From positions 186,001-250,000 of the forward strand of contig CM061248.1 in the NCBI GenBank assembly GCA_022605425.2: a stretch of DNA of 64,000 nt. Direction: 5' to 3'. Below the pieces are notes generated by a model, which saw only the letters and a list, made by a program, of their open reading frames with translations, was not told where the DNA came from and ran no database searches. This document shows positions 3,046 to 64,000 of this stretch, one piece after another. This stretch comes from Hamiltosporidium tvaerminnensis FI-OER-3-3. Taxonomy: Eukaryota > Fungi > Microsporidia. Made by a program: the position numbers and the translations under genes. Position 1 is the stretch's first letter. Each line of letters opens with the position of its first letter.

Positions 3046-4070
3046 GAAGAATTAAAATATTGCTAATCTAAAACTTAATTATATAATAATATATTAAAGG
3101 AAATTTTTTTATGATATTTTGAGAAATATTGATTAGATATACGCCTTAAAACACAGGTAATATCTTCATATTTTGTATTTCTATATATAACCATCAATAT
3201 TTCTTATAAATTAAACTTATGTTTCGGTTTTTTACTCTTTAAAATAAAAAAATATAATTCAAGAACAAAAATAGTTTGTTTGTTATTTTTTTCATAATAT
3301 TATGAAAACAAGTCTGACAAAATAAACACTATTATTCTCTGTAAGTTTGTAAAATTCTTTATTTGATCCAAACATTTTGAGTAAATATTCTTATTATATT
3401 TAATATATCATAAAAGTTACATATAGTCGTTTGTCTTATCACTATCTCAGTCTTTTATCGTAATATACTATTGCTTTTAAATTTATAATACATATGAATC
3501 AAAGCAAGTCGGGCTTAATTATTTTTCTAATAATATCATTTTCTGGCAATTATTTAATTTTATAGCAATTTATAATAACTGATACCTCAAATATTTTTTT
3601 AAATACAACAAATTTTAAATGTAAATTCTTTTATATGTACATCTTATAAAATACATAGAAGATCAGAAATTAAATAGATATTCATTTTATAAAACGTTGG
3701 TACACCATAAATATTGAACATTTAAATTTAATTATTTTTTCTTATGATTACAAACGTGACAAAAAACTTTAAAAAATATTAAAAATATTAAAAACATAAA
3801 AAATATTAAAAACATAAAAAATATTGAATAGACTGTAGTATCGGAATTATAATACTTGCAAATTTTTTGTAAATAAAATTTGATGGAAAAAAGAACAAAA
3901 GAGGATAATTTATTAAGTAAAATGAATTTTAAAGAAATAATCCTTTACTTGGCTTATGGTGAATTAATAAAGAAATTGGCAAGTCTACTTTTCTTAAAAT
4001 GTGTAAAAAAAAATTTTTCTTGTCTTTTGCTATAAAGAAATGCTAAATCATTCCTCATATCCAAAAACAA

Positions 4071-4982: not shown

Positions 4983-5095
4983 TAGATATTTAGATATTTA
5001 GATATTTGGATATTTAGTTATTTAGATATTTAGATATTTAGATATTTAGATATTTAGATATTTAGATATTTAGTTATTTAGATATTTAGTTATTT
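4983..5095. repeat. (TAGATATT)n 8-bp microsatellite, ~14 units
   Basis: Directly visible, with TAGTTATT/TGGATATT variants. Confidence 0.9.
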
Positions 5096-5878: not shown

Positions 5879-6403
5879 GGATTGGTAATTTTTTTTAATA
5901 ATTTTTGTCTGTATTTTATGGTATTTTGGTTACAAAAGTAAAAAAAAATTACATTTTTTAAAATAATGAATTTAAATGAGAAATTCTGATTTATATATTT
6001 ATATAACTGTAAATTAAAGAATCTTTTATATTTTAGATATAGAAAACAAAGTTTTAAGAAACTGAATTATTTTTCAATTCCAAAGAATAGAAAGATAAAA
6101 AAAATGTATATTTAAATTTTTTTGATTAAATAAATATTTTTTACTTCCAAAAATAAAAAAAGATAAAAAGATAAAGTATGAAAATATAAGAAAAAATGTT
6201 TTAAAATAAAAAACTTTAAAAAACAGAAGTGTAAAATATAAAAAAAAAATTTAAATTCAATAAACTATTTCAAATACAAAAAAAATAAATTGTTTAAATA
6301 AAGTTCTTTAAATTTTTTTTATATACAATTTATTTCTGATTAAAATTATTTATTTCAAAGAAATATAAATTACTCTTTAAATTAAACATAAAAATAATAT
6401 TAT

Positions 6404-6660
6404 TACTTATGAAATAAATAATTTTTATGAAAAGAAATTGAGTTTAAAAAACTGTCTAAATCCAAACTTAGGATATCTTTCAATTATTAGTACTTATGAA
6501 ATAAATAATTTTTATGAAAAGAAATTAAGTTTAAAAAACTGTCTAAATCCAAACTTAGGATATCTTTCAATTATTAGTACTTATGAAATAAATAATTTTT
6601 ATGAAAAGAAATTAAGTTTAAAAAACTGTCTAAATCCAAACTTAGGATATCTTTCAATTT
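6404..6660. repeat. 87-bp tandem triplication of the 3' end and stop region of the calcineurin-B-like gene
   Basis: TACTTATGAAATAAATAA... at 6404, 6491 and 6578. Confidence 0.9.
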
Positions 6661-7454: not shown

Positions 7455-7710
7455 TTCATGAAGAAATATCGTAGAGAATTCAATGAAGTTTAGTTATAAA
7501 CCAAAGTACATCAAAAACGGAATTACTCATTAGCAATATCTTAGAGAATTTCAATGAAGGTTAGTTATAAACCAAAGTAAATCAAAAACGGAATTACTCA
7601 TTAGAAATATCTTAAAGAATTTCAATGAAGGTTAGTTATAAATTAAATTACAGCAAAAATGGCGTTATTCATACAGAAATATCTTAGGAAATTGAATATA
7701 GTTTAGTTTC
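7455..7710. repeat. ~71-bp tandem repeat, ~3.5 diverged copies
   Basis: AATATC...GAATTTCAATGAAGGTTAGTTATAAACCAAAG recurs at ~7465, 7535, 7606 and 7678. Confidence 0.8.
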
Positions 7711-36959: not shown

Positions 36960-39110
36960 CCTTCTCTCTCCTGAAATCAACAACAACCTCAGGAAAGTTA
37001 TCAATATCAAACAAACACTCAAAAACACAGATAATAACACCCTCACCTTCTTTCTTACAACACAATTCTCTTATAAATTTTTCTCAATTATTTTTAAACC
37101 TCTCATTATCATAAAACGTACAAAACACAACAGTATCTCTTATTGTTACCATACTTATATCTACATTCCACTCCCTGTTAAAATATTTTAATATTTCAGA
37201 TAATTTACAGTCACCAGGGACAAAGGTATTCCAAAGAGTAAAAGTAGTACTATTAGTATTAACAGGATGTAAGATATCAGAGTAAGTATTAACAGGGTGT
37301 TGTTTACTAGTACTGGTATTAACACCCTCTAATCCATTACTGTTACTAACACCCTCTAATCCATTACTGTCACTAACACCCTCTAATCTATCTCTATTAT
37401 TAACACCCCCCTCCCTACTATCACACCTAACCATCCCACATTCCATCTTCTCAGCCTCAATAACAGATTTACACCTTATAAATGAAAGTCCTAAATTAAC
37501 ATACCAATTCTTATACCCATTACCATATAAAAAATATCCAATCATTTCTAAAACACATAACCCTGATATAACAGATGTAGTAGTTGCTATTGCTGGTATT
37601 ATACGACCTGCTATACCTTTTACTGTTAATTTAGAAACTTCTTTTACTTTATAATTATGTGCTTTTAAATTAGCACATGCATATATAAAATCTATATGAC
37701 CATTACTATCATTATCCTTCTTAAGAGTAACAGGATGAAGAGTAATTATATTATTAGTATTGTTATAAGACGGAATGTTAGTGTGTAAGGTATTTGGTTG
37801 GTGATTAAAGGGGCGTTGTTCATTAGAACTTTTATTAAGAGGGTGTTGTTTAATACTACAGTTATCAAAGGGGTGTTGTTTATTTGTACTGTTACTAACA
37901 CCCTTTATATTACTACCTTTCTCACTAACACCCTCTAATTTACTACCGTTGTCATTAACACCCTCTAACATACTCTTATCATAAATCCCATCTCTTATTA
38001 TATCTTTCACCTCCTTATAACTAACACCGTCTCCATTACCCTCTAATCCCTTTATCTCATACACATTACATATAACCCTACAATAACTCTGTACAAACAA
38101 CACATGTACACAATCATCCTTATTAAAAATAAAAGGTAAAGGTGGTCTCTTTAGCGGTACCCAAAAAGGTTGTCCTTCTCTTGTTACATGTCCAACAGGA
38201 AATGTTTCTATAAGTGTCTTAAATTTATATAAAAATACTTATTAAATAAAATAACACCTTCTCTTACACATTCATATATATTCTTAGGTATACTACTTGC
38301 TAACTCTCATATATCCTCACCAATAGCAACACTCTCAGTACTAAGATTATCATGCGTAGGGATAGTATTGTTAGTAGTAGCGTTAGTAATATATGGGGTG
38401 CTAGTAGTAGGTATAGTATTAACAGGGTGTAAATTATTAATACTATTGTTAACAGGGTCTAGTTCAATATCTTTTAACTAACGCTCCTATAATTACTACT
38501 ACCGTTACTATTCCCCTCTAATTTACTATCCCTATAATTAACACCCCTATAATTAATACCTCTATCCATACTATCACCCTCCAATATATCACCCCCACAC
38601 TTTATATACTCACTTATACCAATAATCTTCTCTTCAAAATTACTCTTAAACTCACTCAATGCCCACTCTATAGATATTCAATACAATGAGGAAAATTACG
38701 TATAATACATGACGGTATACACTTATCAGGTTGATCTCTACTACTATAACTCTCTGTCTTATAAAGTATTACTATCTGTACATTACCTTTAGTACCTAAA
38801 GTACCACTTTCAAATCAAGGTATTTTATTAGTAATACATCTTCTATCTACATACAGTCTAGCTTCTATATTATCTAAAGCATTTACTAGTAAAGAGGTTT
38901 CAATAAGAAAAGTATCAGAGAATATAGACTCAGTCTCTTTACCTACTTTAAAAGAGAGATGTATAATAGTATTGTAAGTAAGGTTGTTGAAAAATGTATT
39001 GGTATTGTTATTATTAGTACTATTATTTTTAAGTATTGTTTAGAATTAAAAATAGTATTATTACTATTATTAGTAATAGAATTCTTTATGGTTAGGGTTA
39101 GTTATATTAT
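36960..39110 (-). pseudogene. UBA1: Ubiquitin-activating enzyme E1, C-terminal half only, with stops, frameshifts and repeat insertions
   Basis: [37 protein letters not shown] (catalytic Cys region), FWVPLKRPP, KDNDSNGHIDFIYACANL, IAGRIIPAIATTT; truncated at the LINE. Confidence 0.88.
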
Positions 39111-42100: not shown

Positions 42101-42912
42101 TAGGCCATGACTACACCAGACGGCATAATGAAGTGGTTAGATTCCTACACTTATTTCTCCTAAATAGATATAAGTTTAAGTCTTCAAAACGAATTAGGAG
42201 TCACTCAGTTCAAGAAATTCTTGATATGAGTATGCAGAGATAAGAGTGTACACCAGAATAAAAACTGATGTTAAAATTCGGAATAACAGACCCGATATAT
42301 TTATTTTAGATAAGAAGAAGAATAAGATAACACTCATTGAAGTAGGAATCACTTCCCAAGATTCACTTCAAATAGTTGAAACTGAAAAACTTAGGAAGTA
42401 TGACCTGCTAGGTAATGAGTTGGGTCTTATTTATAGGTGTAGTGTTGAGATAATCCCTTATGTGATGACCTGGGACGGTATTGTGACAAAATACCATAAA
42501 TCTCATCTTAAAAGACTAGAAATACCCATGAATGTAGAGGCATACATTCAGTCTATAGTACTTAAGATGACAGTCGAAACAATTTCCTTTGATCGACGAA
42601 GAGGACTTGAGTCAGGACTAAATGCCGAAGAGAGCTGGGAGAGAGCGTCAATGGGTGTTATTATGAGATCAGAGAAGCATGAGGAAATAACACTCCCTTA
42701 AAAGAAGAGAAGAGAGAGGAATATGGTGCAAAAATTTTAAACCAAAAAATAAAGCACCCTTTATTTCACAAGGAGGAACCACTTTAGAGGAACCGACCAA
42801 TAACATAAATGAAGAGTCGGATTTGGAAGAAGAGACAGTAGTGGTTAAAGAGGTAGAAGAAAACATATAAAAATGTTAAAAATATTTTAACCCAGAATTC
42901 TATTAAATAAAT
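39118..42912 (+). mobile_element. Near full-length R4-clade non-LTR retrotransposon (RT + restriction-like endonuclease), copy A, defective
   Basis: PNWKAAGIDGI, GILQGDSL*PLLF, LFIDDL, RLYLPRTELGRGL, CEKMLGHDYTRRHN, RPDIFILD..LIEVG..KYDLL; many stops and frameshifts. Confidence 0.92.
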
Positions 42913-50539: not shown

Positions 50540-53500
50540 AAAAATTCTGGGTTAAAATATTTTTAACATTTTTATATGTTTTCTTCTACCTCTTTAACCA
50601 CTACTGTCTCTTCTTCCAAATCTGACTCTTAATTTATGTTATTTGGCGGTTCCTGTAAAGTGGTTTCTCCTTGTGAAATAAGGGGTGTATTATTTTTTGG
50701 TTTTAAGATTTTAACACCATCTTCCTCTCTTTTCGCTTCTTTTAAAGAGGGTATTGGTTCCTCATGCATCTCTGATCTCATAATAACACCCATTGACGCT
50801 CTCTCCCAGCTCTCTTCGGCATTTAGTCCTGACTCAAGTCCTCTTCGTCGATCAAAGGAAATTGTTTCGACTGTCATCTTAAGTACTATAGACTGAATGT
50901 ATACCTCTATATTCATGGGTATTTCTAGTCTTTTAAGATGAGATTTATGGTATTTTGTCACAATACCGTCCCAGGTCATCACATAAGGGATTATCTCAAC
51001 ACTACACCTATAAATAAGACCCAACTCATTACCTAGCAGGTCATACTTCCTAAGTTTTTCAGTTTCAACTATTTGAAGTGAATCTTGGGAAGTGATTCCT
51101 ACTTCAATGAGTGTTATCTTATTCTTCTTCTTATCTAAAATAAATATGTCGGGTCTGTTATTCCGAATTTTAACATCAGTTTTTATTCTGGTGTACACTC
51201 TTATCTCTGCATACTCATATCAAGAATTTCTTGAACTGAGTGACTCCTAATTCGTTTTGAAGACTTAAACTTATATCTATTTAGGAGAAATAAGTGTAGG
51301 CATCTAACCACTTCATTATGCCGTCTGGTGTAGTCATGGCCTAGCATTTTTTCGCATCGAGTTGCTAGATAATCTACAGTCTTACCAGATTTATTTAAGT
51401 GTTGACACACACTATCTGCTCCCCAGAATACATTTCTATCCTGGATATAGCAGAACACAGCTTCATTTCGTGGCCTAATATTTCCTCTCTTTAGCCATCT
51501 TGAAGAGTCACTAACACTTACAAGCTCATTTTTCCTTGCATTATATAACTTTGAATGGAGTTTCGTTTTTCTATTTCGTTATATAGTTTTGCAAGTTGAG
51601 CTTCTTCTAAAATTTTCTTAGTGACTTCTTCTACTAACCTGTATTTTAGTTTTAAGAAGCCTTTTATTAGTGCAAGATGGGTTTTATTATTATTCTCCAC
51701 CTTGAGGATTGCTGCTCGTCTAGTTGATATTTCTTTACTTTTTTCCAGACAATCCAAGAGTTGTAGAAGCATATGTTCGCTTCGCAACTCAACACTATGT
51801 AGGCCTCTTCCAAGTTCTGTTCTAGGAAGATACAAACGCTCTTTACATTCCGGGCGAAGATGTATCTTATTCTTCACCAACACCACACGCACTGCATCAT
51901 CTAACGTAGGGAAGTCAGCCGGTTCAAGTCGAAGTACTCCTATGTGATAGTTGATTAACGATATCGCATGTTGATTGATTGCAGAAAATAAATTTTTTGC
52001 ATTTAATCTAGTGCGACAAAGTCTTTAAACTCTTGATATAAGTTTGCTCTGTACTTCTTCAAATGAGCTACGTGTTGGAATTCTTCTGCTATCTTCTATT
52101 ATTCCTAAATATTTGTAACACTAACACTTTCTAGAAGAGTAGCAGTATCTTCACAACACGTATCATTTGTGGCTGACTTCTTTTTGTTAATCTCCGAGCC
52201 AATCACCTCTAAAAATTCCTTTGTCTCGCCTGTCTTAGCACTCAATGTGGAGCTGTCTTTTGCAAGGAGCTTAAGATCGTCAATAAACAAGAGATAATTA
52301 GTAGAATGGGATTCTGCATCTGTTTGTACTGTCACTTTTGTGTCTTTTTCATTAAGCTTTCGGCTTAATGGATCCATACACAACACAAACAACAATGGTT
52401 ACAAACTATCTCCTTGTACACCTCTTACCGCCCCTAATTGGTTCTCTGCAAGCAACCCTCGCCTTTCGCTTTTCCATTTGAACGACTTTCGTTACAAACT
52501 TTGTCGTTAACTTGTAGAGCGTGGACATACAAGTGATTGCCCTGTAATCAGAGCCTCTGGTGGAATTCCTTTCGGCATCAAATACGTAAGCCCGCTGTAA
52601 AACCAATCAGCTTGAGGTGTTCCTTATAAACATATAACTTTCACAATATCATTAAGATATTTATGAAAAGTTGTAAGTTTCTTTATGAAAAAATTGTATA
52701 TACCATCAATTCCAGCAGCTTTCCAATTAGGAAGCCAATTAATGATATTTAAAAGTTCATCAAGTAAAGGAAACGTGGTCGGATGATCTTCTGATACAAA
52801 TGGAATCAAATAATCATTGTACGTGACTATGTCATCATTTTTGTTCCACATTGTAGACCAAAAACTACCAATTTCATCACGACTGACCACATGCTCGGAT
52901 TCCACACGCTCAGATAACCCACGATAAAATCGACCTCAAAAGCTCAAACATACGATTCTCTTTTCGGAATTGCTTCCTACTTTCATGCATCGAAATTTTT
53001 TTCTCGTAAACGTTCAAAGACTCATTCTTATTAACTAAAGCCTCAGAAAGATCAGTTACACTGCTCAAGTTTAAATTAAACTCTCGCATGATTTTCTTAA
53101 GGCTCTTCGTTTCCGAAATGGAGAGCTTTTCCTGCTTACGAGCCTTCTCGAGAAGATCTTTGGAAAGTACTAACTTAGAAATTTTACTTTCTATGTTTTC
53201 CTTCCAAGCGGATCTAGGCTTCTCTTTACGTGTTGCCTCGTCATAGCATACCTGCGCAGCTTGCATGATATACGCGGCTTCCGTAATTGACTCGGGTACA
53301 TGAGCTCCGGCTTATTCATAGACTTCTCGATTAATGAGATCCAGGAATTTACTATCAACCAATTCATTTGGATGTTTTCTAGTTCGGACCACCACTTTTC
53401 CAATTTCCTTCTTCGAGATTTCTTTGATTTTACTCAAGAATTTATCTCTCAGGTTTATGACTCCGTGATGTCGGTCAAGGTGCATGTATCAGCGAGACAA

Positions 53501-55486: not shown

Positions 55487-55970
55487 AGGGTTTTAATTAT
55501 ATTCTAGTAATAAGGCATTTTAAGACCCTCTTAATAGTAGTACTGTTATTAAAACCCCTTTATATATGAGTATAATTATTACCACCCCTTTATTTACTAG
55601 CAGGGTCGCTAACACCCTCTAATTTACTAGTACTGTATTTAAACCCGCTTTATTTACAGTATTGTTGTTAAGACCCTCTAATTTATTAGTACTTTTATTA
55701 AAACCCCTTTATATATGAGTATAATTATTAACACCTCTTTATTCTAGTACTGTTGTTAACACATTCTTGATATGAAGATAATTAGTAACACCCTCTTATT
55801 TACTAGTATTGTTATTAACACCTATTTATTTACAGTGTTGTTGTCAATACCCTCTTATTAACTGATAACCTCGTTAACACCCCTTTATTTACTAGTAGTG
55901 TTATTAACACCCTCTTATTATATAGTATGTTATTAACACCTCTACCTGCACCATACTATTAACACCCCCA
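55487..55970. repeat. Intergenic ~30-bp-period array of TTAACACCC-like motifs upstream of MON2
   Basis: About 15 spaced AACACCC/AAACCCC/AGACCC motifs. Confidence 0.8.
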
Positions 55971-56035
55971 TATCTTATCACTATCTGTAACACGTTTCAT
56001 CAAAACAATATAACACAACACAAAACCCCCTTCAA

Positions 56036-59000
56036 ATGTTAAACATAGACACACAATACCTCTCAACCACACTTATTCAACTACAAACAGAAACAAAAAA
56101 GAAACATCCTAAGATATCAGAAGCATGTACAGAAGCTTTACAATTACTCAGTACAAATACTTCTATTAACACCCTTTTATCTAGTCCTATTTTACTCAAC
56201 CCTTTTGTTTTAACAGTACAACTTAAACAGAAAATACCACTTAATATCCTAGAAGTGATATATGTTATTTTACAGACACAATGTGTTAATAACAGTAAAG
56301 GGGGTGTTAATAATGAGGATATGCTAGAGGGTGTTAATAAAGAGGATATGTTAGAGGGTGTTAGTGATAGTAAAGATATGCAGGAGGGTGTTAATCATAA
56401 GGAGTATAAATTAGAGGGTGTTAACAACAGTAGTAATGAACAACAGGGTGTTATAAACACTACAAATGAACAACAGGGTGTTAGTGACACTACATATAAC
56501 TATCACCCTGTTAACAACACTACTAGTAAATATCACCCTGTTAACAACACACCTAACAATAACCCACCCCTTATAAATAACACCCTCTATAATAACATGG
56601 ATACCACTGTTAATACAATACTTTCCTCTTTATCTTCAAATACATATCTAACACCCCCACACAACATAAAAATATTACAATACACACTTATATTTTTAAA
56701 ATACCCTTTAAAGATAGAAACATTAAGTCTTATATTTAACACCCTCTTAAGTATTACAAATAATAGTAATCAACAAGTAAGTGTTACAGCTAAAGCTATT
56801 ACATATCAGTTTATATCTTTAATACCTGAAACTCATCCTTCTTTTATGTATACACTTGTTACTTATATATGTGATATACTTAAGACACCTAAACCTTTTT
56901 ATTATGATATACTTTGTACAACACTTAAAGTTATACTTAATAACACAGAGACTAACCCTAAGGTTGATAGTACGGATATATCTAGTAATATATCTAACCC
57001 TACCCTAACCCTAAATAAATGCATAAAAACAAACCCTAACCCTACCCTAACCCTAGACACACGCATAAACAACTCTACCCTAACCCTAGACACACCCTTT
57101 AACACCATCAATACTAACAATACCAATACTTTAGATATTATATCTCCCATTTCTACTCTTCTAATAAATAAACTAAACAACACCTTAGAAGAAATAGAAT
57201 TACTAAAATGTCTTGAAGCTATACTAATAATACTAAACAACAATTACACAAACAACACAACAATAACATCTTTTCTATCTACAATACTAAATCTTTATAA
57301 ACATTCTGAATATAAAAATGCCATTATAAAGTTTTTCCTTTCTTTTCCTTTTAAATATCCTTTTATTTATCATATTTTACTTACTTTATATACAGAAGTA
57401 TTTAATTCTTTAGATTTAAGTTTATATTCTGCTTTTAATAAGGATTGTTTAGAATATTGTTGTAAAATAAAAGATTTTTTATTTATAGATAACAGGAGTG
57501 ATAGAGGGTATGGGGTTTATAGTGTAGTAGAGTGTGTTAGTGGGATAGAGGGTGTTAGTGGTTATGGGGGTGTTAGTGGTTATGGGTTAGATGGTGTTAG
57601 TTATAGAGGTAGTGGGTTAGAGGGTGTTAGTTATAAGAGTAGTAAACAACAGGGTGTTAATGAGAGTACTTATGAACAACAGGGTGTTAATAACAGTACA
57701 GATAATTATCACCCTGTTAATGAGAGTACACATAATTATCACCCTGTTAATAACAGTACTATTAATTATCACCCTCTTAATGAGAGTACTATTAATTATC
57801 ACCCTGTTAATAATAATATATCTTTATTTATATTATTCTTTTATAAATACATGTTAGAAGTAAAGAAACCTATACATAGTAATTATCAAGAACAAATATC
57901 TTTAATATTTAACACTATAATAGAATATCTTATTATAAGTAATGTTAATATAGTTAATAAGAAGAGTAATAAGGAATGTAATAAGAAGAGTAATAAGGAA
58001 TGTAATGATAATTGTAAGGGTGATATAAACACTAACCCTACCCTAACCCTAGAAACATGCATAAACACTAACCCTAACCCTACCCTAACCCTAGAAACGT
58101 GCATAAACACCAATCCTAACCCTACCCTAACCCTAGAAACATGCATAAACACTAATAATATTACCAATAAGAATACAAATAACAATATAATAACTAATAC
58201 TAACAATATAATAACTAACAACATAACAAATAATATCAATAATACTAATACTCTTATAAATTTAATATCCCTTTATACATCTCTATCACCTCTATTTCTA
58301 TACAACTGTATATCTTTATGTATAAAACATAAAAATAACATACATTATACTATATGGACTATAATAATAACAAAAATAACAACAGAACAAGAAACTTGTT
58401 GGGAATATATTGTTAACAGTAGTGATACCTTTAATACAAATGAAATATATTGTTTATTTAAAGGTATTTGTTATACTCTTATTAATAATAAGGATATTGA
58501 TATTAATTTTAAATGTATTAATGAGGATATATATTATAGTGATAGCAGTAGTGAGATAAGGGGTGATAATGATAGTAGGAAGGTAGAGGGTGATAGAGAT
58601 AGTAGGGAGGTAGGGGATGATAGAGATAAGAGTAATGTATTAAAGGGTGATAGTATAGTAGAAGGTAAGTTAGGGGGTGATAATGATAGGGATATGTTAG
58701 GGGGTGTTAATGATAGTAATATGTTAGGGGGTGTTAATGATAGTAATATGTTAGGGGGTGATAATAAGCTATATGATAAACAACAGGGTGTTAATAAGCT
58801 ATCTAATGAACAACACCCCTTTATCGATCTATCTAATGAACAACAGGGTGTTAATAATAATACTAATATACAAAAACCCTTTATAGATCTATCTAATGAA
58901 CAACAGGGTGTTAATAACAATACTAATGGACAACACCCCTTTAATAACAATACTATTGAACAACACCCCTTTATCGATCTATCTAATGAACAACACCCCT

Positions 59001-62000
59001 TTATCGATCTATCTAATGAACAACACCCCTTTAATACTACTCCATATAATACTAATACACATCACCCCTTTATTAACACTCTATATAATACACAACACCC
59101 CTTTAATACTACACTTAACCTTTTAAGACTTAAACAACTATTCCTTAAGAATATAACCCTTATTTCTAATAATATATATTTATTAGAATTAACACTTAGT
59201 GTTATTTATAAACTTAATAGTATTGATACGTTATATGTCTTAGTACTTGAATATTATAAAACTATAACGTATAAAGAGGGTAGTAATAGTAGATTAGATA
59301 GTAGTGATATAAAGAGTAGATTAGATAGTAGGGTTAGTAATAGAGAGGGTGATATAAAGAGTAAATTAGATAGTAGGGTTAGTGATAGAGATAGTAGATT
59401 AGATAGTAGTGATATAAAGAGTAATATAAAGGATAATACTATGGATAATACTATGAATAATACTATAAAAGATAATACAATGAATACTATAAAGGATAAT
59501 ACCTGTAGTGTTATACCTCTTTATTATATCTATAAGCTATGTAACAAGCATATAAATAACACCTATAGTAATATAGATAGTAACAGTGTTAGTGACATAG
59601 ATAATAACAATAACAGTAATGGTAGTGGTAATAGTAACACTAAAGGTAGTGGTAATAGTAATACTAATGGTAATAACAATACTATCACTAATACTACTAA
59701 CAATAACCCTACTACTAACAATAACCCTACTACTAATACTACTACAATAACCCTACTAATAATAACACTATTAACCCTACTAATAATAATACCCTTGTTA
59801 AGGTACTGTCTTTACTTTCTGAATTGATAGGAATATCAAGTTATTATTTTAAAGATGAATGGGGTGTTATTTTTAAGATATTAAATATTACTATAAAACA
59901 AAGGGGTTTTAATGATAGTAATTATGATATATTAAGGCTTATTGTTGATAATATAGGGTTTATAAGTGATAGGGGTGTTAAGGAGTGTATAGAGATTATA
60001 AGGGTGTTATGTTATAGTGGTATAGTAGAGGGGGGTGTTAGAGGTATGTTAGAGGGTATAAAGGGTGATAGAGGTATGGATGAGGGTGTAAAGGGTGATA
60101 GAGGTATGTTAGAGGGTGTAAAGGGTGATAGATATGTTAGAGGGTGTAAAGGGTGATAATAGTATGTTAGAGGGTATAAAGGGTGATAGAGGTATGGATG
60201 AGGGTGTAAAGGGTGATAGAGATATGTTAGAGGGTGTTAGGGATAAGGATATGTTAGAGGGTGATAGAGGTATGGATGAGGGTGTAAAGGGTGATAGGGA
60301 TAAGGATATGTTACAGGGTGTAAAGGGTGATAGAGGTATGGATATGTTAGAGGGTGTTAACAACAGTATATATGAACAACAGGGTTTTAACAACAGTACT
60401 TATGAACAACAGGGTTTTAACAACAGTACTTATGAACAACAGGGTGTTAATGAGAGTACTTATGAACAACAGGGTGTTAATGAGAGTACTTATGAACAAC
60501 AGGGTGTTAATGACACTACTAGTAACCATCACCCTGCTAACAACACTACTAATAACTTACACCCCTTTAATAACACATATAACTATCTTCCTATAAATAA
60601 CACCCTTTTAATATCAAATACTTCTAAAAATATTGTGTTAAACTGTCTTTACCTGTTAGATGATATTTCTTTTCATATAAATAATACAGATTCTTCGTTG
60701 TTTTATTGTTATTTTGACTGTCTTATACACTTTATAAGGGATAAAAGGTGTGATGTAATGGATACAGCAGTTAAATGTGTTTATAATAATTTAAGAGGGT
60801 GTTATTCTAAAGAGATGTGGATATATATAAATAATAGGGTGTTATTTAGTATATTAGAAGTAAGTGATATTATATTAAAGGGTGTTAGTATAGAGGATAG
60901 TAATATGGGTATATTTGAGGGTAATAAAGGGGGTGTTAATGATATAGATATGGTAGGGGGTGTTAATAATAGAGGTATGTTAGAGGGGGGTGTTAATATA
61001 CAGGGTAGTAAAAGGGGTGTTAGTAACCATATAGATAAACAACAGGGTGTTAATGACACTACTAATGAACAACAGGGTGTTAATGACACACCTTTTGAAC
61101 AACACCCTGTTAATAACACTACAGTAATAAGACGTGTTAATTCTTTACTCTTTATTATAAATGAAACTAACACCTTTATTACCTCAACACCATATTCTTA
61201 TATAACACCCTTTATTCATAAGTATATATATTTTATACAAAGAGGACTTACAAGTCTTTATAATTTACATAATAAGGATGAAATAGCAGGGGTGTTAATA
61301 AAAGGACTTGAATCTATACTTAAGACTGTTAATAGTGTAAAGGGTGTTAGAGATATAGATATGGTAGGGGGTGTTACTTATAAAGATAGTAAAGAGGGTG
61401 TTACTTATGAAGATATTAAAGAGGGTGTTACTTATAAGGATAGTAAAGAGGGTGTTACTTATAAAGATAGTAAAGAGGGTGTTACCTATAAGGATAATAA
61501 AGAGGGTGTTACTTATAAGTATATTAAAGAGGGTGTTAATAACAGTACTATTAAACAACAGGGTGTTAGTTACAGTACATATAAACAACACCCCTTTAAA
61601 AACACATCATATAAACAACAGGGTGTTAACAACACATCATATAAGCAACACCCTCTTAATAACACATCGTATAAACAACACCCTCTTAATAACACCCCAT
61701 ACACCCATCACCCCTTTAATAACATACCAAGTAATATATTTAATAATAACTTATATACATTAACATGTTCTATTATAAATATAATAGGTAACATTAGTAA
61801 TGACTATAATGAAGAAGTATATATAAATATAATAGGTGTAATTTATAATATACCTTTATATGTAATTATACCTGTTAGTGATAAACTGTTAAATAATATT
61901 TCTAATATTTTATTTTTAGATATTGAAGATGATAGTAACAGGGGTGTTAATAATAGAGAGTATGATATAAAAGGTGTTAATAACAGTACTAATGAACAAC

Positions 62001-63526
62001 GGGGTGTTAACGACTGTACTAATGAACAACAGGGTTTTAACACTAGTACACATGAGAAACACCCTGTTAACAAGACACCATATGAACAACACCCCTTTAA
62101 TACCAATACTACAGATGAACAACACCCCTTTAATAACACTATATATACACATCAGGGTATAACACCCTTACAGCTTTGTATTTTAAGGTATTTAGAATAT
62201 TTAGGAATAAATAACAATATCTTTAATAATAACAGGGTGTTAAATTACTGTAAATGGTTAGATATGTGTAATTATAGTATGTGTTGTTATCTTATGAATG
62301 AAATAAGTAGAATAATTACAAGTAATGGTTATAACAGAAGTATAAAGGATACTAAGGATAACAGTATTATAGATCATGTATTGAATACTAATTGTATTGT
62401 AAGTAATATGAACTCTAAGACTACTGTAGATATCAAGTCCAACCCTACCCTAACCCTAGACAATTGCATAAACAATTCTTCCCTAACCCTAGACACATCT
62501 GTTAACAATACTACCCTAACCCTAGACACTTGCATAAACAATTCTTCCCTAACCCTAGACACTTGCATAAACAATAACCCTTCTTATGTAATATCTACTG
62601 TTATAAAAAGTATAACAAGTCTTATGTTTACTAAGAATATACATTGGGAAAGAGGAATGATTTGTTTAAAAAGAATAAGTAATTGTATAACAGTAAATGA
62701 ATATAAAGATTATTTGGATTGTTGTTATAAAATATTTATTGAAGATAAAGTTAAAGGAGAGGTTAGTTTTGAGAGGAAAAGAGAAAGAATTTTAATTCAG
62801 TATATTGGTGTTTTAGAGGGTGTTATTTATAGGATTTTAGATTGTTATAAGGAAAAGGAGGTAAGGGGTGTTAATGATATAAGGTGTGATGTAAAGGGTG
62901 TTAATAAGGGTAGTAATAAACAACAGGGTGTTAATATAAGTACTGATGAACAACAGGGTGTTAATATAAGTACTAATGAACAACAGGGTGTTAATATAAG
63001 TACTAATACTTATCACCCTTTAGATATAAGTCAAGATGAACAACACCCTTTAGATATAAGTAGTAATATTTATCACCCTCTTAATACCAATACTACACAG
63101 CACCCCTTTAACAATAACAATACTACTTATCACCCTCTTAATTACAATTATAACTTACATGATGATGTTAAAAGAACATTTTTATTGTTAGATAGCATTT
63201 GTGAGGGGGAGGTGTTATTTAGAGACAAATTATCTTTAAGAGTTATAGGGGTGTTATTTAACCATACAGAAATATTAGAAGTAAGAGAAATGGTATGTAG
63301 AAGGGTTAGTAGGGTGTTAAGAAGGTATGTTAAATGTGTTGTTAATCAGTCTATGTCTTATAAGGTAAGAGATATGTGTGTAAGAGTGTTAGAGTGTATG
63401 GAGAGTGTTAAAGATAAGAGTGTTATTGAATGTGTTAAGAAAGAGGTTTTAGATTGTTTGGTTGGAATGGAATGGAGGGTTGTTGATAGTGTTAGAAGGG
63501 TGTTAAGTATAATGTTTAGTGAGTAG
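56036..63526 (+). CDS. MON2: Mon2 (Sec7/BIG-related HEAT-repeat protein), expanded by many repeat inserts; two frameshifts (~59745, ~60131)
   Basis: N-terminal LQTETKKKHPKISEACTEAL...ILLNPF (DCB domain); EWGVIFKIL, LRLIVDNI..CIEII, NIVLNCLYLLDDIS, DKRCDVMDTAV match Mon2 C-terminal motifs in order; CCCCC before ATG. Confidence 0.75.
56950..57095. repeat. Telomere-like (CCCTAA/CCCTA) tract inside the CDS
   Basis: aaccctaaccctaccctaaccctag; also at 58030-58140 and 62438-62565. Confidence 0.85.
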
Positions 63527-64000
63527 GGTTAGAGGGTGTTAAGTATAATGTTTAGTGAGGAGGGTTAGAGGGTGTTAATATATAGTAGTATAGTTAGTAT
63601 TATAAAGGGGTGTTAATATATAGTAGCATAGTTAGATGTTAAAGGGGGTTTAATATATAGTAGTTTGGTTAGTATGATAAAGGGGTGTTATTATAAAGAG
63701 TACTATCTTATTATAAAGGGGTGTTAATATATGGTAGTACTATCCTATGATAACGGGGTGTTATTATAAAGAATACTATCTTATTATAAAGGGGTTTTAT
63801 TATTAATGGTAGTATAGTATGTAGGATAACGGGGTGTTATTATAAAGAATACTATTCTATGTTAAAGAGGTGTTAATATATAGTAGTTTAGTTAGTATGA
63901 TAAAGGGGTGTTATTATAAAGAGTAATATCCTATGATAAAGGGGTTTTATTATAAAGAATACTATCCTATAATAAGGGGGTGTTAATGAAGTATTTCCTC
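63526..64000. repeat. Intergenic ~30-37-bp-period array of GGGGTGTTA motifs downstream of MON2
   Basis: About 14 AGGGGTGTTA(A/T)T motifs; reverse-complement sense of the upstream array. Confidence 0.8.

What the first reader, a model, noticed from the sequence alone, without database searches (positions are those of the whole stretch)
56285..63150. Polar 30-bp arrays of AACA(GGG/CCC)TGTT inserted in frame in conserved genes; the core flips orientation at each array centre
Seen: MON2 has at least 8 inserts (~56285-56600, 57495-57815, 58540-59115, 60020-60610, 60880-61125, 61330-61750, 61930-62170, 62860-63150) built from ~30-nt units. They run LEGVN -> QQGVN -> QHPVN/YHP; the 58540-59115 array alternates locally. 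The G and C units differ only by inversion of a 3-nt loop inside an inverted repeat: AACA-GGG-TGTT at 61041 and 61071 versus AACA-CCC-TGTT at 61101, an exact 30-nt period. GGGTG sites therefore point inward from both sides of a centre, and each insert could fold back on itself. The same family occurs in the UBA1 relic on the other strand, again in the sense orientation and in the hydrophilic frame; the antisense frame would read hydrophobic LLTGCC/LLTP. Established: the 60020-60610 insert sits between Mon2 motifs that are nearly adjacent in homologues. Inference: a selfish or functional coding-compatible palindromic element, analogous to Rickettsia palindromic elements. It could be a phased (~3 helical turns) protein-binding platform for chromatin, origin or centromere function, or a segment removed at the RNA, DNA or protein level. 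I am not aware of a description of this architecture.
Basis: partly seen in the sequence, partly recalled or inferred. Interest (0 to 1): 0.9.

Follow-up and report, generated by a model that had tools for sequence, protein, structure and literature searches.

The report
Inward-facing DNA motif arrays inside genes
In a parasite of water fleas, one short DNA word is stacked in inward-facing arrays inside and around many essential genes, lengthening their proteins and biasing even their silent codons, which points to an undescribed DNA-level marking or repair system whose function is still unproven.

Summary
Real and genome-wide. The genome is the microsporidian Hamiltosporidium tvaerminnensis; H. 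magnivora shares the arrays. All eight MON2 inserts run G-type then C-type; 82 of 92 mixed arrays in 16 stretches do so. The constrained thing is a DNA word (about TWAARGGGTGTTA), not the peptide: it flanks genes, appears off-frame in structured coding sequence (45 vs about 8 expected) and differs less between assemblies than neighbouring insert bases (1.4% vs 3.8%), while insert amino acids drift near-neutrally. A G/C skew wave of about 300 bp either side of each centre reaches synonymous codons of conserved residues. Arrays look like a convergent pair 30 bp apart, amplified by tandem duplication, which reproduces the polarity. Inter-assembly indels are 3n; six frameshifts tested in other genes are absent from independent assemblies. 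RNA folding is unremarkable. Intein, intron and Rickettsia-palindrome membership fail. Best reading: oriented protein-binding sites marking housekeeping-gene islands (binder and function inferred); main rival: non-adaptive break-repair drive. No reads could be examined. A 2020 paper noted only Asn-rich MCM expansions. Other first-stage notes saw this pattern elsewhere in the same genome.

The parts
55520..55970 (+). Non-coding upstream array, about 30-nt period, C-type on the top strand (true reverse complement of the G unit)
   Evidence: same array in H. magnivora contig L036
56026..56030 (+). CCC-like microsporidian promoter signal 6 nt before the MON2 ATG, same orientation as the C-type sites
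   Evidence: signal described in PMC2803860
56036..63526 (+). MON2-like gene (DCB domain at residues 8-87; weak HDS match at 59800-59905), in three reading frames in this assembly
   Evidence: PF16213 E 2e-5, below cut-off; PF09324 E 0.07
56285..56600 (+). Insert 1, 7 G then 3 C sites, centre about 56491; shared with H. magnivora
57495..57815 (+). Insert 2, 6 G then 4 C sites, centre about 57697
58540..59115 (+). Insert 3, G run, alternating centre (60-nt period), C run
60020..60610 (+). Insert 4, long G arm then 3 C sites, centre about 60517; holds a 2-nt shortfall near 60130 (probable assembly error)
60880..61125 (+). Insert 5, 6 G then 1 C site; exact GGG/GGG/CCC 11-mers at 61041, 61071, 61101
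61330..61750 (+). Insert 6, G run (27-nt then 30-nt units), one alternation, C run
61930..62170 (+). Insert 7, 3 G then 4 C sites
62860..63150 (+). Insert 8, 5 G then 4 C sites, centre about 63001
56950..57140 (+). Low-complexity insert with telomere-like CCCTAA tracts (NPTLTL peptide), C-skewed
57950..58250 (+). Low-complexity insert with telomere-like tracts; skew + to -
59270..59790 (+). Low-complexity insert without the main motif; skew +0.96 to -0.39; holds a 1-nt shortfall near 59745 (probable assembly error)
62330..62580 (+). Low-complexity insert with telomere-like tracts; skew + to -
63487..63985 (+). Downstream array (begins at the end of the ORF), 36-38-nt period, G-type on the top strand
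37087..38975 (-). Broken, 5'-truncated UBA1 paralogue with polar arrays centred at about 37310 and 37886 and a third at about 38390-38600

Best explanation
A Hamiltosporidium-specific, orientation-dependent double-stranded DNA site (about TWAARGGGTGTTA / TAACACCCYTTWA) is retained in islands of conserved housekeeping genes. Its basic module is a convergent pair 30 bp apart around an AT-rich dyad. Local tandem duplication of either half gives GnCm arrays, and 60-bp duplication across the centre gives the alternations. Arrays can grow only where tolerated: gene flanks and variable surface loops, where they are kept as 3n, stop-free, hydrophilic peptide that itself evolves nearly neutrally. The same directional force leaves single sites in other frames and a G-left/C-right skew in synonymous codons for about 300 bp around each centre. 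SHOWN: the word, its polarity, strand symmetry, DNA-level conservation, 3n unit indels, the codon wave, sufficiency of duplication for polarity. INFERRED: that inserts are translated; that a protein binds the word (candidates: a telomere-repeat-type Myb protein, or the factor reading the microsporidian CCC promoter signal); that the role is to keep these genes in open chromatin in a genome that is 40% repeats.
For: Motif consensus is the same in flanks, G arms and C arms. Motif bases differ between assemblies at 18/1258 vs 229/6053 for other insert bases; inserts N:S 171:44 vs 56:33 in structured blocks. Codon choice is locked to the word: CAC 200/202 in HPx, CAA then CAG in QQG. Isolated off-frame sites 45 vs about 8 under position-matched synonymous shuffles; anagram controls not enriched. 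Synonymous wave in 110/128 blocks, also in orthologue-aligned RPA2 residues (Ser TCN 29/43 vs 7/37). Central spacing is 30 in 31 of 65 listed centres, 29-31 in non-coding ones; non-coding spacings cluster at 29-31, 35-41, 57-61. Toy duplication model gives adjacency 2.7:1 vs observed 99:34. Small genes are bracketed C-left, G-right. Telomere hexamer is the top tandem hexamer in islands; 15 Myb matches in the genome. C-type flanks run into the CCC promoter signal.
Against: No binder, chromatin map or expression data. 27-nt units are common (52 arrays), off helical phase. Several housekeeping genes in the window lack arrays. Units are homogenised by duplication, so low motif divergence and shared spacing may partly reflect conversion or descent, not selection. 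A binding-site model does not by itself explain the broad synonymous wave. Loci were chosen from motif hits; background is only 97 kb.
Confidence: 0.45

Rival explanations
1. Non-adaptive break-repair drive: array centres are recurrent double-strand-break sites; resection exposes the top strand on the left and the bottom strand on the right, giving rotationally symmetric mutation or conversion bias; telomerase-seeded or templated additions and unequal repair build the arrays. The word is a by-product or a conversion-driven passenger.
For: Symmetric G-left/C-right wave of about 300 bp each side with raised GC3 near centres; G-then-C is the polarity of head-to-head telomere joins (established knowledge); CCCTAA tracts enriched and oriented with local skew; TERT present, Ku not found, weak Spo11 match; motif-free inserts have the same skew; weak selection reported for this genus (PMC6944219).
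Against: The main word is not TTAGGG; point-mutation bias cannot make one specific 13-mer in three frames; cut-promoting motifs are normally eroded, not amplified (own knowledge); I could not retrieve a paper to check hotspot skew polarity.
Confidence: 0.27
2. The arrays are chromosome-function sites: dispersed centromere units (microsporidia have no recognised centromeres) or replication initiation/termination zones read by an oriented binder.
For: About ten islands per 2-Mb contig on C1 and C2; island-wide skew runs C-left to G-right; convergent phased sites resemble viral origins (own knowledge); no centromeric regions found in these genomes (PMC12449221).
Against: Eight or more centres within one gene is far denser than origins or kinetochores need; sites track conserved genes and their loops.
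Confidence: 0.1
3. A mobile, coding-compatible micro-palindrome (RPE- or MITE-like): the 33-45-bp convergent pair inserts as a unit, then amplifies locally.
For: Central pair is an imperfect palindrome alike at unlinked loci; a non-LTR retroelement carries a convergent pair 40 bp apart at its 3' end.
Against: No constant target-site duplication in the listed centres; no presence/absence polymorphism of whole inserts in 8 allele comparisons; the one DNA transposon checked has unrelated ends; does not explain off-frame single sites, one-orientation flanks or the codon wave.
Confidence: 0.1
4. Inserts are removed or skipped (non-canonical introns, ribosome bypass, inteins or programmed DNA deletion).
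For: Frameshifts in this assembly fall inside inserts; arms can pair; Haag et al. left inteins open for MCM.
Against: Six frameshifts tested in other genes are absent from independent assemblies, one from the same isolate; indels are 3n; sense frame is always hydrophilic and stop-free; folding z about -1; Iso-Seq-confirmed introns average 28 bp; no intein domain.
Confidence: 0.05
5. Ordinary slippage-generated low-complexity loops with no DNA-level force.
For: Asn-rich, near-neutral, at loops where other microsporidia also expand.
Against: One shared word at all loci, consistent seed orientation, flanking arrays, off-frame sites and codon wave.
Confidence: 0.03

Closest known systems
Asn-rich in-frame expansions of Hamiltosporidium MCM proteins (Haag et al., PMC6944219)
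   Same: Same genus; in-frame Asn-rich expansions splitting conserved motifs; very probably the same inserts
   Different: Reported for MCM only, as possible inteins or neutral expansions; no DNA word, polarity, flanking arrays or codon wave described
Low-complexity protein insertions of Plasmodium falciparum (PMC3140889)
   Same: Asn/Asp-rich, length-variable by slippage or unequal exchange, AT-rich parasite
   Different: No shared oriented motif, convergent centre or skew wave in the passages read
PATCs of C. elegans (PMC4947018; bioRxiv 10.64898/2026.08.08.743475)
   Same: Helically periodic, minisatellite-derived DNA tied to essential genes; a model for the proposed anti-silencing role
   Different: PATCs are non-coding An/Tn periodicities acting mechanically and shaped by transcription direction; here a specific G/C word, in coding DNA, strand-symmetric and convergent
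Nucleosomal signatures of yeasts (PMC4422121, PMC5088595)
   Same: Base-composition pattern that shapes codons and amino acids
   Different: Mononucleosome scale and genome-wide; here about 300 bp each side, centres 380-2000 bp apart, limited to islands, with a discrete motif
Microsporidian CCC-/GGG-like promoter signal (PMC2803860)
   Same: AT-rich run followed by CCC; same orientation upstream of ATG; a 35-bp head-to-head promoter is described in E. cuniculi
   Different: Single copy next to the ATG; not known as arrays, inside genes or downstream in inverted form
Rickettsia palindromic elements (own knowledge)
   Same: Repeat family found in frame in conserved genes and in non-coding DNA
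   Different: RPEs are discrete, fixed-size stable hairpins; these are variable tandem arrays without exceptional folding
Interstitial telomeric sequences / telomere fusions (own knowledge)
   Same: G-then-C polarity; TTAGGG-type tracts present in the islands
   Different: Main unit is about 30 nt with a non-telomeric word

Membership tests
Rickettsia palindromic elements | Inserted in frame in conserved genes | tested here: met
   RPA2 alignment to 15 orthologues
Rickettsia palindromic elements | Discrete element of near-constant length | tested here: not met
   Inserts about 25-190 aa, varying by whole units between alleles
Rickettsia palindromic elements | Unusually stable hairpin | tested here: not met
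   z -0.75 and -1.0, two inserts only
MITE | Terminal inverted repeats | tested here: inconclusive
   Central pair gives 7-11-bp inverted repeats, but so does any convergent site pair
MITE | Constant target-site duplication and a matching autonomous element | tested here: inconclusive
   No constant flank; only one transposon's ends checked, unrelated
Inteins | HINT fold with splicing residues and hydrophobic core | tested here: not met
   No such Pfam match; inserts hold 1 Trp, 31 Cys and 83 Phe in about 8,350 residues
Spliceosomal or non-canonical introns | Free of reading-frame constraint | tested here: not met
   93% of G-arm spacings 3n in genes vs 54% outside; allele indels 3n
Spliceosomal or non-canonical introns | Absent from mature mRNA | not testable with these tools
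Interstitial telomeric sequences | Tandem copies of the species' telomere unit | tested here: not met
   Met only by minor tracts; main unit differs from TTAGGG
PATCs | Non-coding 10-bp An/Tn periodicity | tested here: not met
   Mostly coding, defined by a G/C word; a PATC score was not computed
PATCs | Protects genes from silencing | not testable with these tools
   Needs chromatin or reporter data
Nucleosomal signatures | About 150-bp genome-wide period | tested here: not met
   Centre spacing 379-1995 bp, median about 860; absent outside islands
Microsporidian CCC-like promoter signal | CCC after AT-rich DNA just upstream of ATG | tested here: met
   At starts of island genes, including 56026-56030; applies to the last flank site only
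Microsporidian CCC-like promoter signal | Transcription starts at the site (for intragenic copies) | not testable with these tools
   No 5' end data
Low-complexity protein insertions (Plasmodium type) | Asn-rich, length-variable, at tolerant loops, weakly constrained | tested here: met
   describes the peptide only

The most novel reading that the evidence does not exclude
A eukaryote with almost no intron space writes a convergent, phased protein-binding code into its essential genes, paying with translated junk loops and altered codons, to license those genes (or to build dispersed centromere units) in a transposon-rich genome; a retroelement carries a copy of the convergent pair, possibly as mimicry.
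Probability: 0.3. Interest if true: 0.93.

Novelty: categorically new. Interest (0 to 1): 0.82.

Why it matters
It would explain why Hamiltosporidium genes are unusually long for microsporidia (mean 1,391 bp vs 952-1,081 bp in other large genomes, PMC12449221) and settle the open intein-or-expansion question for its proteins. It is a case where a DNA-level signal, not protein function, dictates hundreds of residues and synonymous codons in Prp8, RNA polymerase I, midasin, VPS13 and myosin. It gives defined targets for three open questions in microsporidia: how essential genes escape silencing, where centromeres are, and how breaks are repaired without Ku. If the repair rival is right it is instead an extreme, mappable record of strand-asymmetric repair, and would then count as a new variant of recombination-driven low-complexity regions. 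Practically, repeats here cause frameshift errors and fragmented gene models.

Tried and rejected
RNA hairpin selection: z about -1. Protein-level selection for the peptide: near-neutral N:S and non-coding arrays. T-box binder (motif resemblance from memory): none found, but the control did not ring either. Mariner ends as source: unrelated in the one element checked. Occurrence beyond the genus: none in Astathelohania contejeani (21.7 kb) or an unnamed relative (9.5 kb), none in 11 other microsporidian RPA2 proteins, none in JGI metagenomes; small samples. First block-level enrichment was inflated by off-frame tandem units and was redone with isolated sites only. Papers on hotspot skew could not be retrieved. 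A search for microsporidia + asparagine-rich + insertions returned nothing.
Full report
Source. The window is G000:C3:186001-250000 of a 21,638,905-base, 17-contig assembly. That matches Hamiltosporidium tvaerminnensis, 21.64 Mb in 17 contigs with TTAGGG telomeres (PMC10542269); contig starts carry that repeat, and all 39 protein hits to the first MON2 frame are from H. tvaerminnensis or H. magnivora.

Observation. The eight inserts, their order of peptides and the three 11-mers are as described. The gene is MON2-like on a sub-threshold DCB match and a weak HDS match. Four more low-complexity inserts lack the main word; three run from G- to C-skew and one is C-skewed throughout. A C-type array lies upstream and a G-type array downstream of the gene. 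The UBA1 piece is a broken paralogue with the same units. In RPA2, aligned to 15 orthologues, the inserts fall between conserved blocks, some at loops where Edhazardia, Conglomerata and Binucleata also expand.

Extent. The 16-nt G unit has 211 exact copies and the matching C unit 72, in clusters, with none for reversed controls. Hosts include RPA2, Prp8, midasin, VPS13, Sec7, Ski2, Dis3, TAF2, UBA1 and a spindle-pole protein. In the window plus 15 fetched loci, 82 mixed arrays run G before C and 10 the other way. Genome-wide, close G-then-C pairs number 256 against 58; 18 of the first 50 of the former belong to a retroelement, leaving roughly 2.8 to 1. Density is 8.1 sites per kb in these loci and 0.06 elsewhere. 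The loci were picked from motif hits, so this is not an unbiased sample. Nothing similar was seen in limited samples from other microsporidia or in metagenomes.

The constrained unit is DNA. Oriented to the G strand, flank, G-arm and C-arm sites share about TWAARGGGTGTTA. Upstream flanks hold the full reverse complement of the G unit; in coding C arms only the core is inverted, which keeps the peptide hydrophilic (inference). Codon choice follows the word. Between assemblies, insert codons change 171 non-synonymous to 44 synonymous, against 56 to 33 in structured blocks, while motif bases differ at 1.4% and other insert bases at 3.8%. Isolated sites in other frames within structured sequence number 45 against about 8 expected, and 25 of 29 C-type ones lie in the 5' half of their block; G-type ones are not polarised by half.

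A skew wave reaches silent sites. Across 128 structured blocks, Ser TCN use falls from 0.77 to 0.13, C at fourfold sites from 0.157 to 0.025, and G at Lys/Glu/Gln third positions rises from 0.23 to 0.59, from the 5' to the 3' fifth; 110 blocks agree, and six control genes show no consistent pattern. It holds in orthologue-aligned RPA2 residues. With motifs masked, GC skew is about +0.3 to +0.6 left of 77 centres and -0.3 to -0.5 right, fading by about 350 bp. Whole islands are C-rich on the left and G-rich on the right, and even a small gene is bracketed this way. The pattern is the same for genes on either strand, so it does not follow transcription.

How arrays form. The innermost G and C sites are 30 bp apart in about half of the centres, 60 in many others, and 29-31 outside genes, around an AT-rich dyad often holding AGTACT. 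Allele differences are whole units. A toy model that starts from one G-C pair and duplicates one unit, or two units one time in five, gives 98% polar arrays and 2.7 to 1 adjacency, close to the observed 99 to 34. Polarity inside an array therefore needs only a convergent seed. Why seeds are convergent, and why flanks and codons follow the same rule, needs a directional force.

Are inserts kept? Indels between assemblies inside inserts are multiples of three except six coding positions where this assembly has one extra base; the Illumina contigs, one from the same isolate, read through. Those contigs were found as open frames, which biases the comparison. The two MON2 breaks, near 59745 and 60130, are 1- and 2-base shortfalls in repeat units and are probably errors too, but no allele covered them. 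Folding is not better than shuffles. Confirmed introns in this species average 28 bp.

Mechanism. I favour oriented binding sites that mark housekeeping-gene islands (0.45). Leads for the binder: the telomere hexamer is the commonest tandem hexamer in islands and absent from background, and the genome has 15 Myb-domain matches; or the factor for the CCC promoter signal, since C-type flanks run into that signal and a convergent pair resembles a minimal head-to-head promoter. Non-coding spacings near 30, 38-39 and 59 suggest helical phasing, though 27 is common in genes and arrays are not independent. The break-repair rival (0.27) explains the wave better and the word worse; TERT is present, Ku was not found and Spo11 matches weakly. 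Centromere or origin roles, a mobile micro-palindrome and removal of the inserts rank lower.

Known literature. Haag et al. noted Asn-rich in-frame expansions in MCM proteins and left inteins open. I found no description of the word, polarity or wave in the papers searched. The peptide fits ordinary low-complexity insertions; the DNA architecture fails the defining tests of every family considered, and works most like PATCs if the anti-silencing reading holds. Other first-stage notes report the same pattern on other pieces of this genome; they are not independent support.

Verdict. Real, genus-wide and undescribed at the DNA level; function unproven. Interest 0.82.

Noticed in passing
window:31675-31717, 42653-42695, 50749-50791; L009:3062; L016:9692: The 3' end of an abundant non-LTR retroelement (restriction-like endonuclease type) carries a convergent GGGTGTT...AACACCC pair 40 bp apart, with further motif-like sites downstream; source, mimic or chance is unresolved.
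   Followed up: partly
window:16234-18008: Mariner-like DNA transposon with 40-nt terminal inverted repeats starting CTCCCT, resembling plant-type elements.
   Followed up: partly
window:30566-31387 (-): Arf-like GTPase with an in-frame insert of about 80 aa made of a different, 15/30-nt G-rich repeat.
   Followed up: no
L024 (Ski2), near 3617: One unit reads CCC-type in the same-isolate Illumina contig L031 and GGG-type in this assembly: a core flip between alleles or a chimeric unit.
   Followed up: partly
L016:4560-4850: Small Eaf6-like gene (name from memory of the sequence) bracketed by a 650-bp C array and an 850-bp G array.
   Followed up: partly
G000:C4:420294-420659 and C11:194092-194882: The TERT gene lies next to array locus L022, and a 692-aa two-Myb gene has motif units beside its Myb repeats.
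   Followed up: no
L009 and L012, first 100 bases: Telomere tracts contain an occasional 7-nt variant (TTAGAGG on the G strand), which resembles the start of the outer G-arm unit.
   Followed up: no
window:1521-1826, 4983-5095, 6398-6659, 7462-7708: Unrelated AT-rich tandem repeats of 74, 8, 87 and 71 nt in non-island DNA.
   Followed up: no
island loci vs background: Dinucleotide use differs: TA, AC and GT enriched about 1.2-fold, CG and GC at about half, TC and GA reduced.
   Followed up: no
window:45881-46095: 30-nt inverted repeats 155 nt apart, 90% complementary; possible small non-autonomous element.
   Followed up: no
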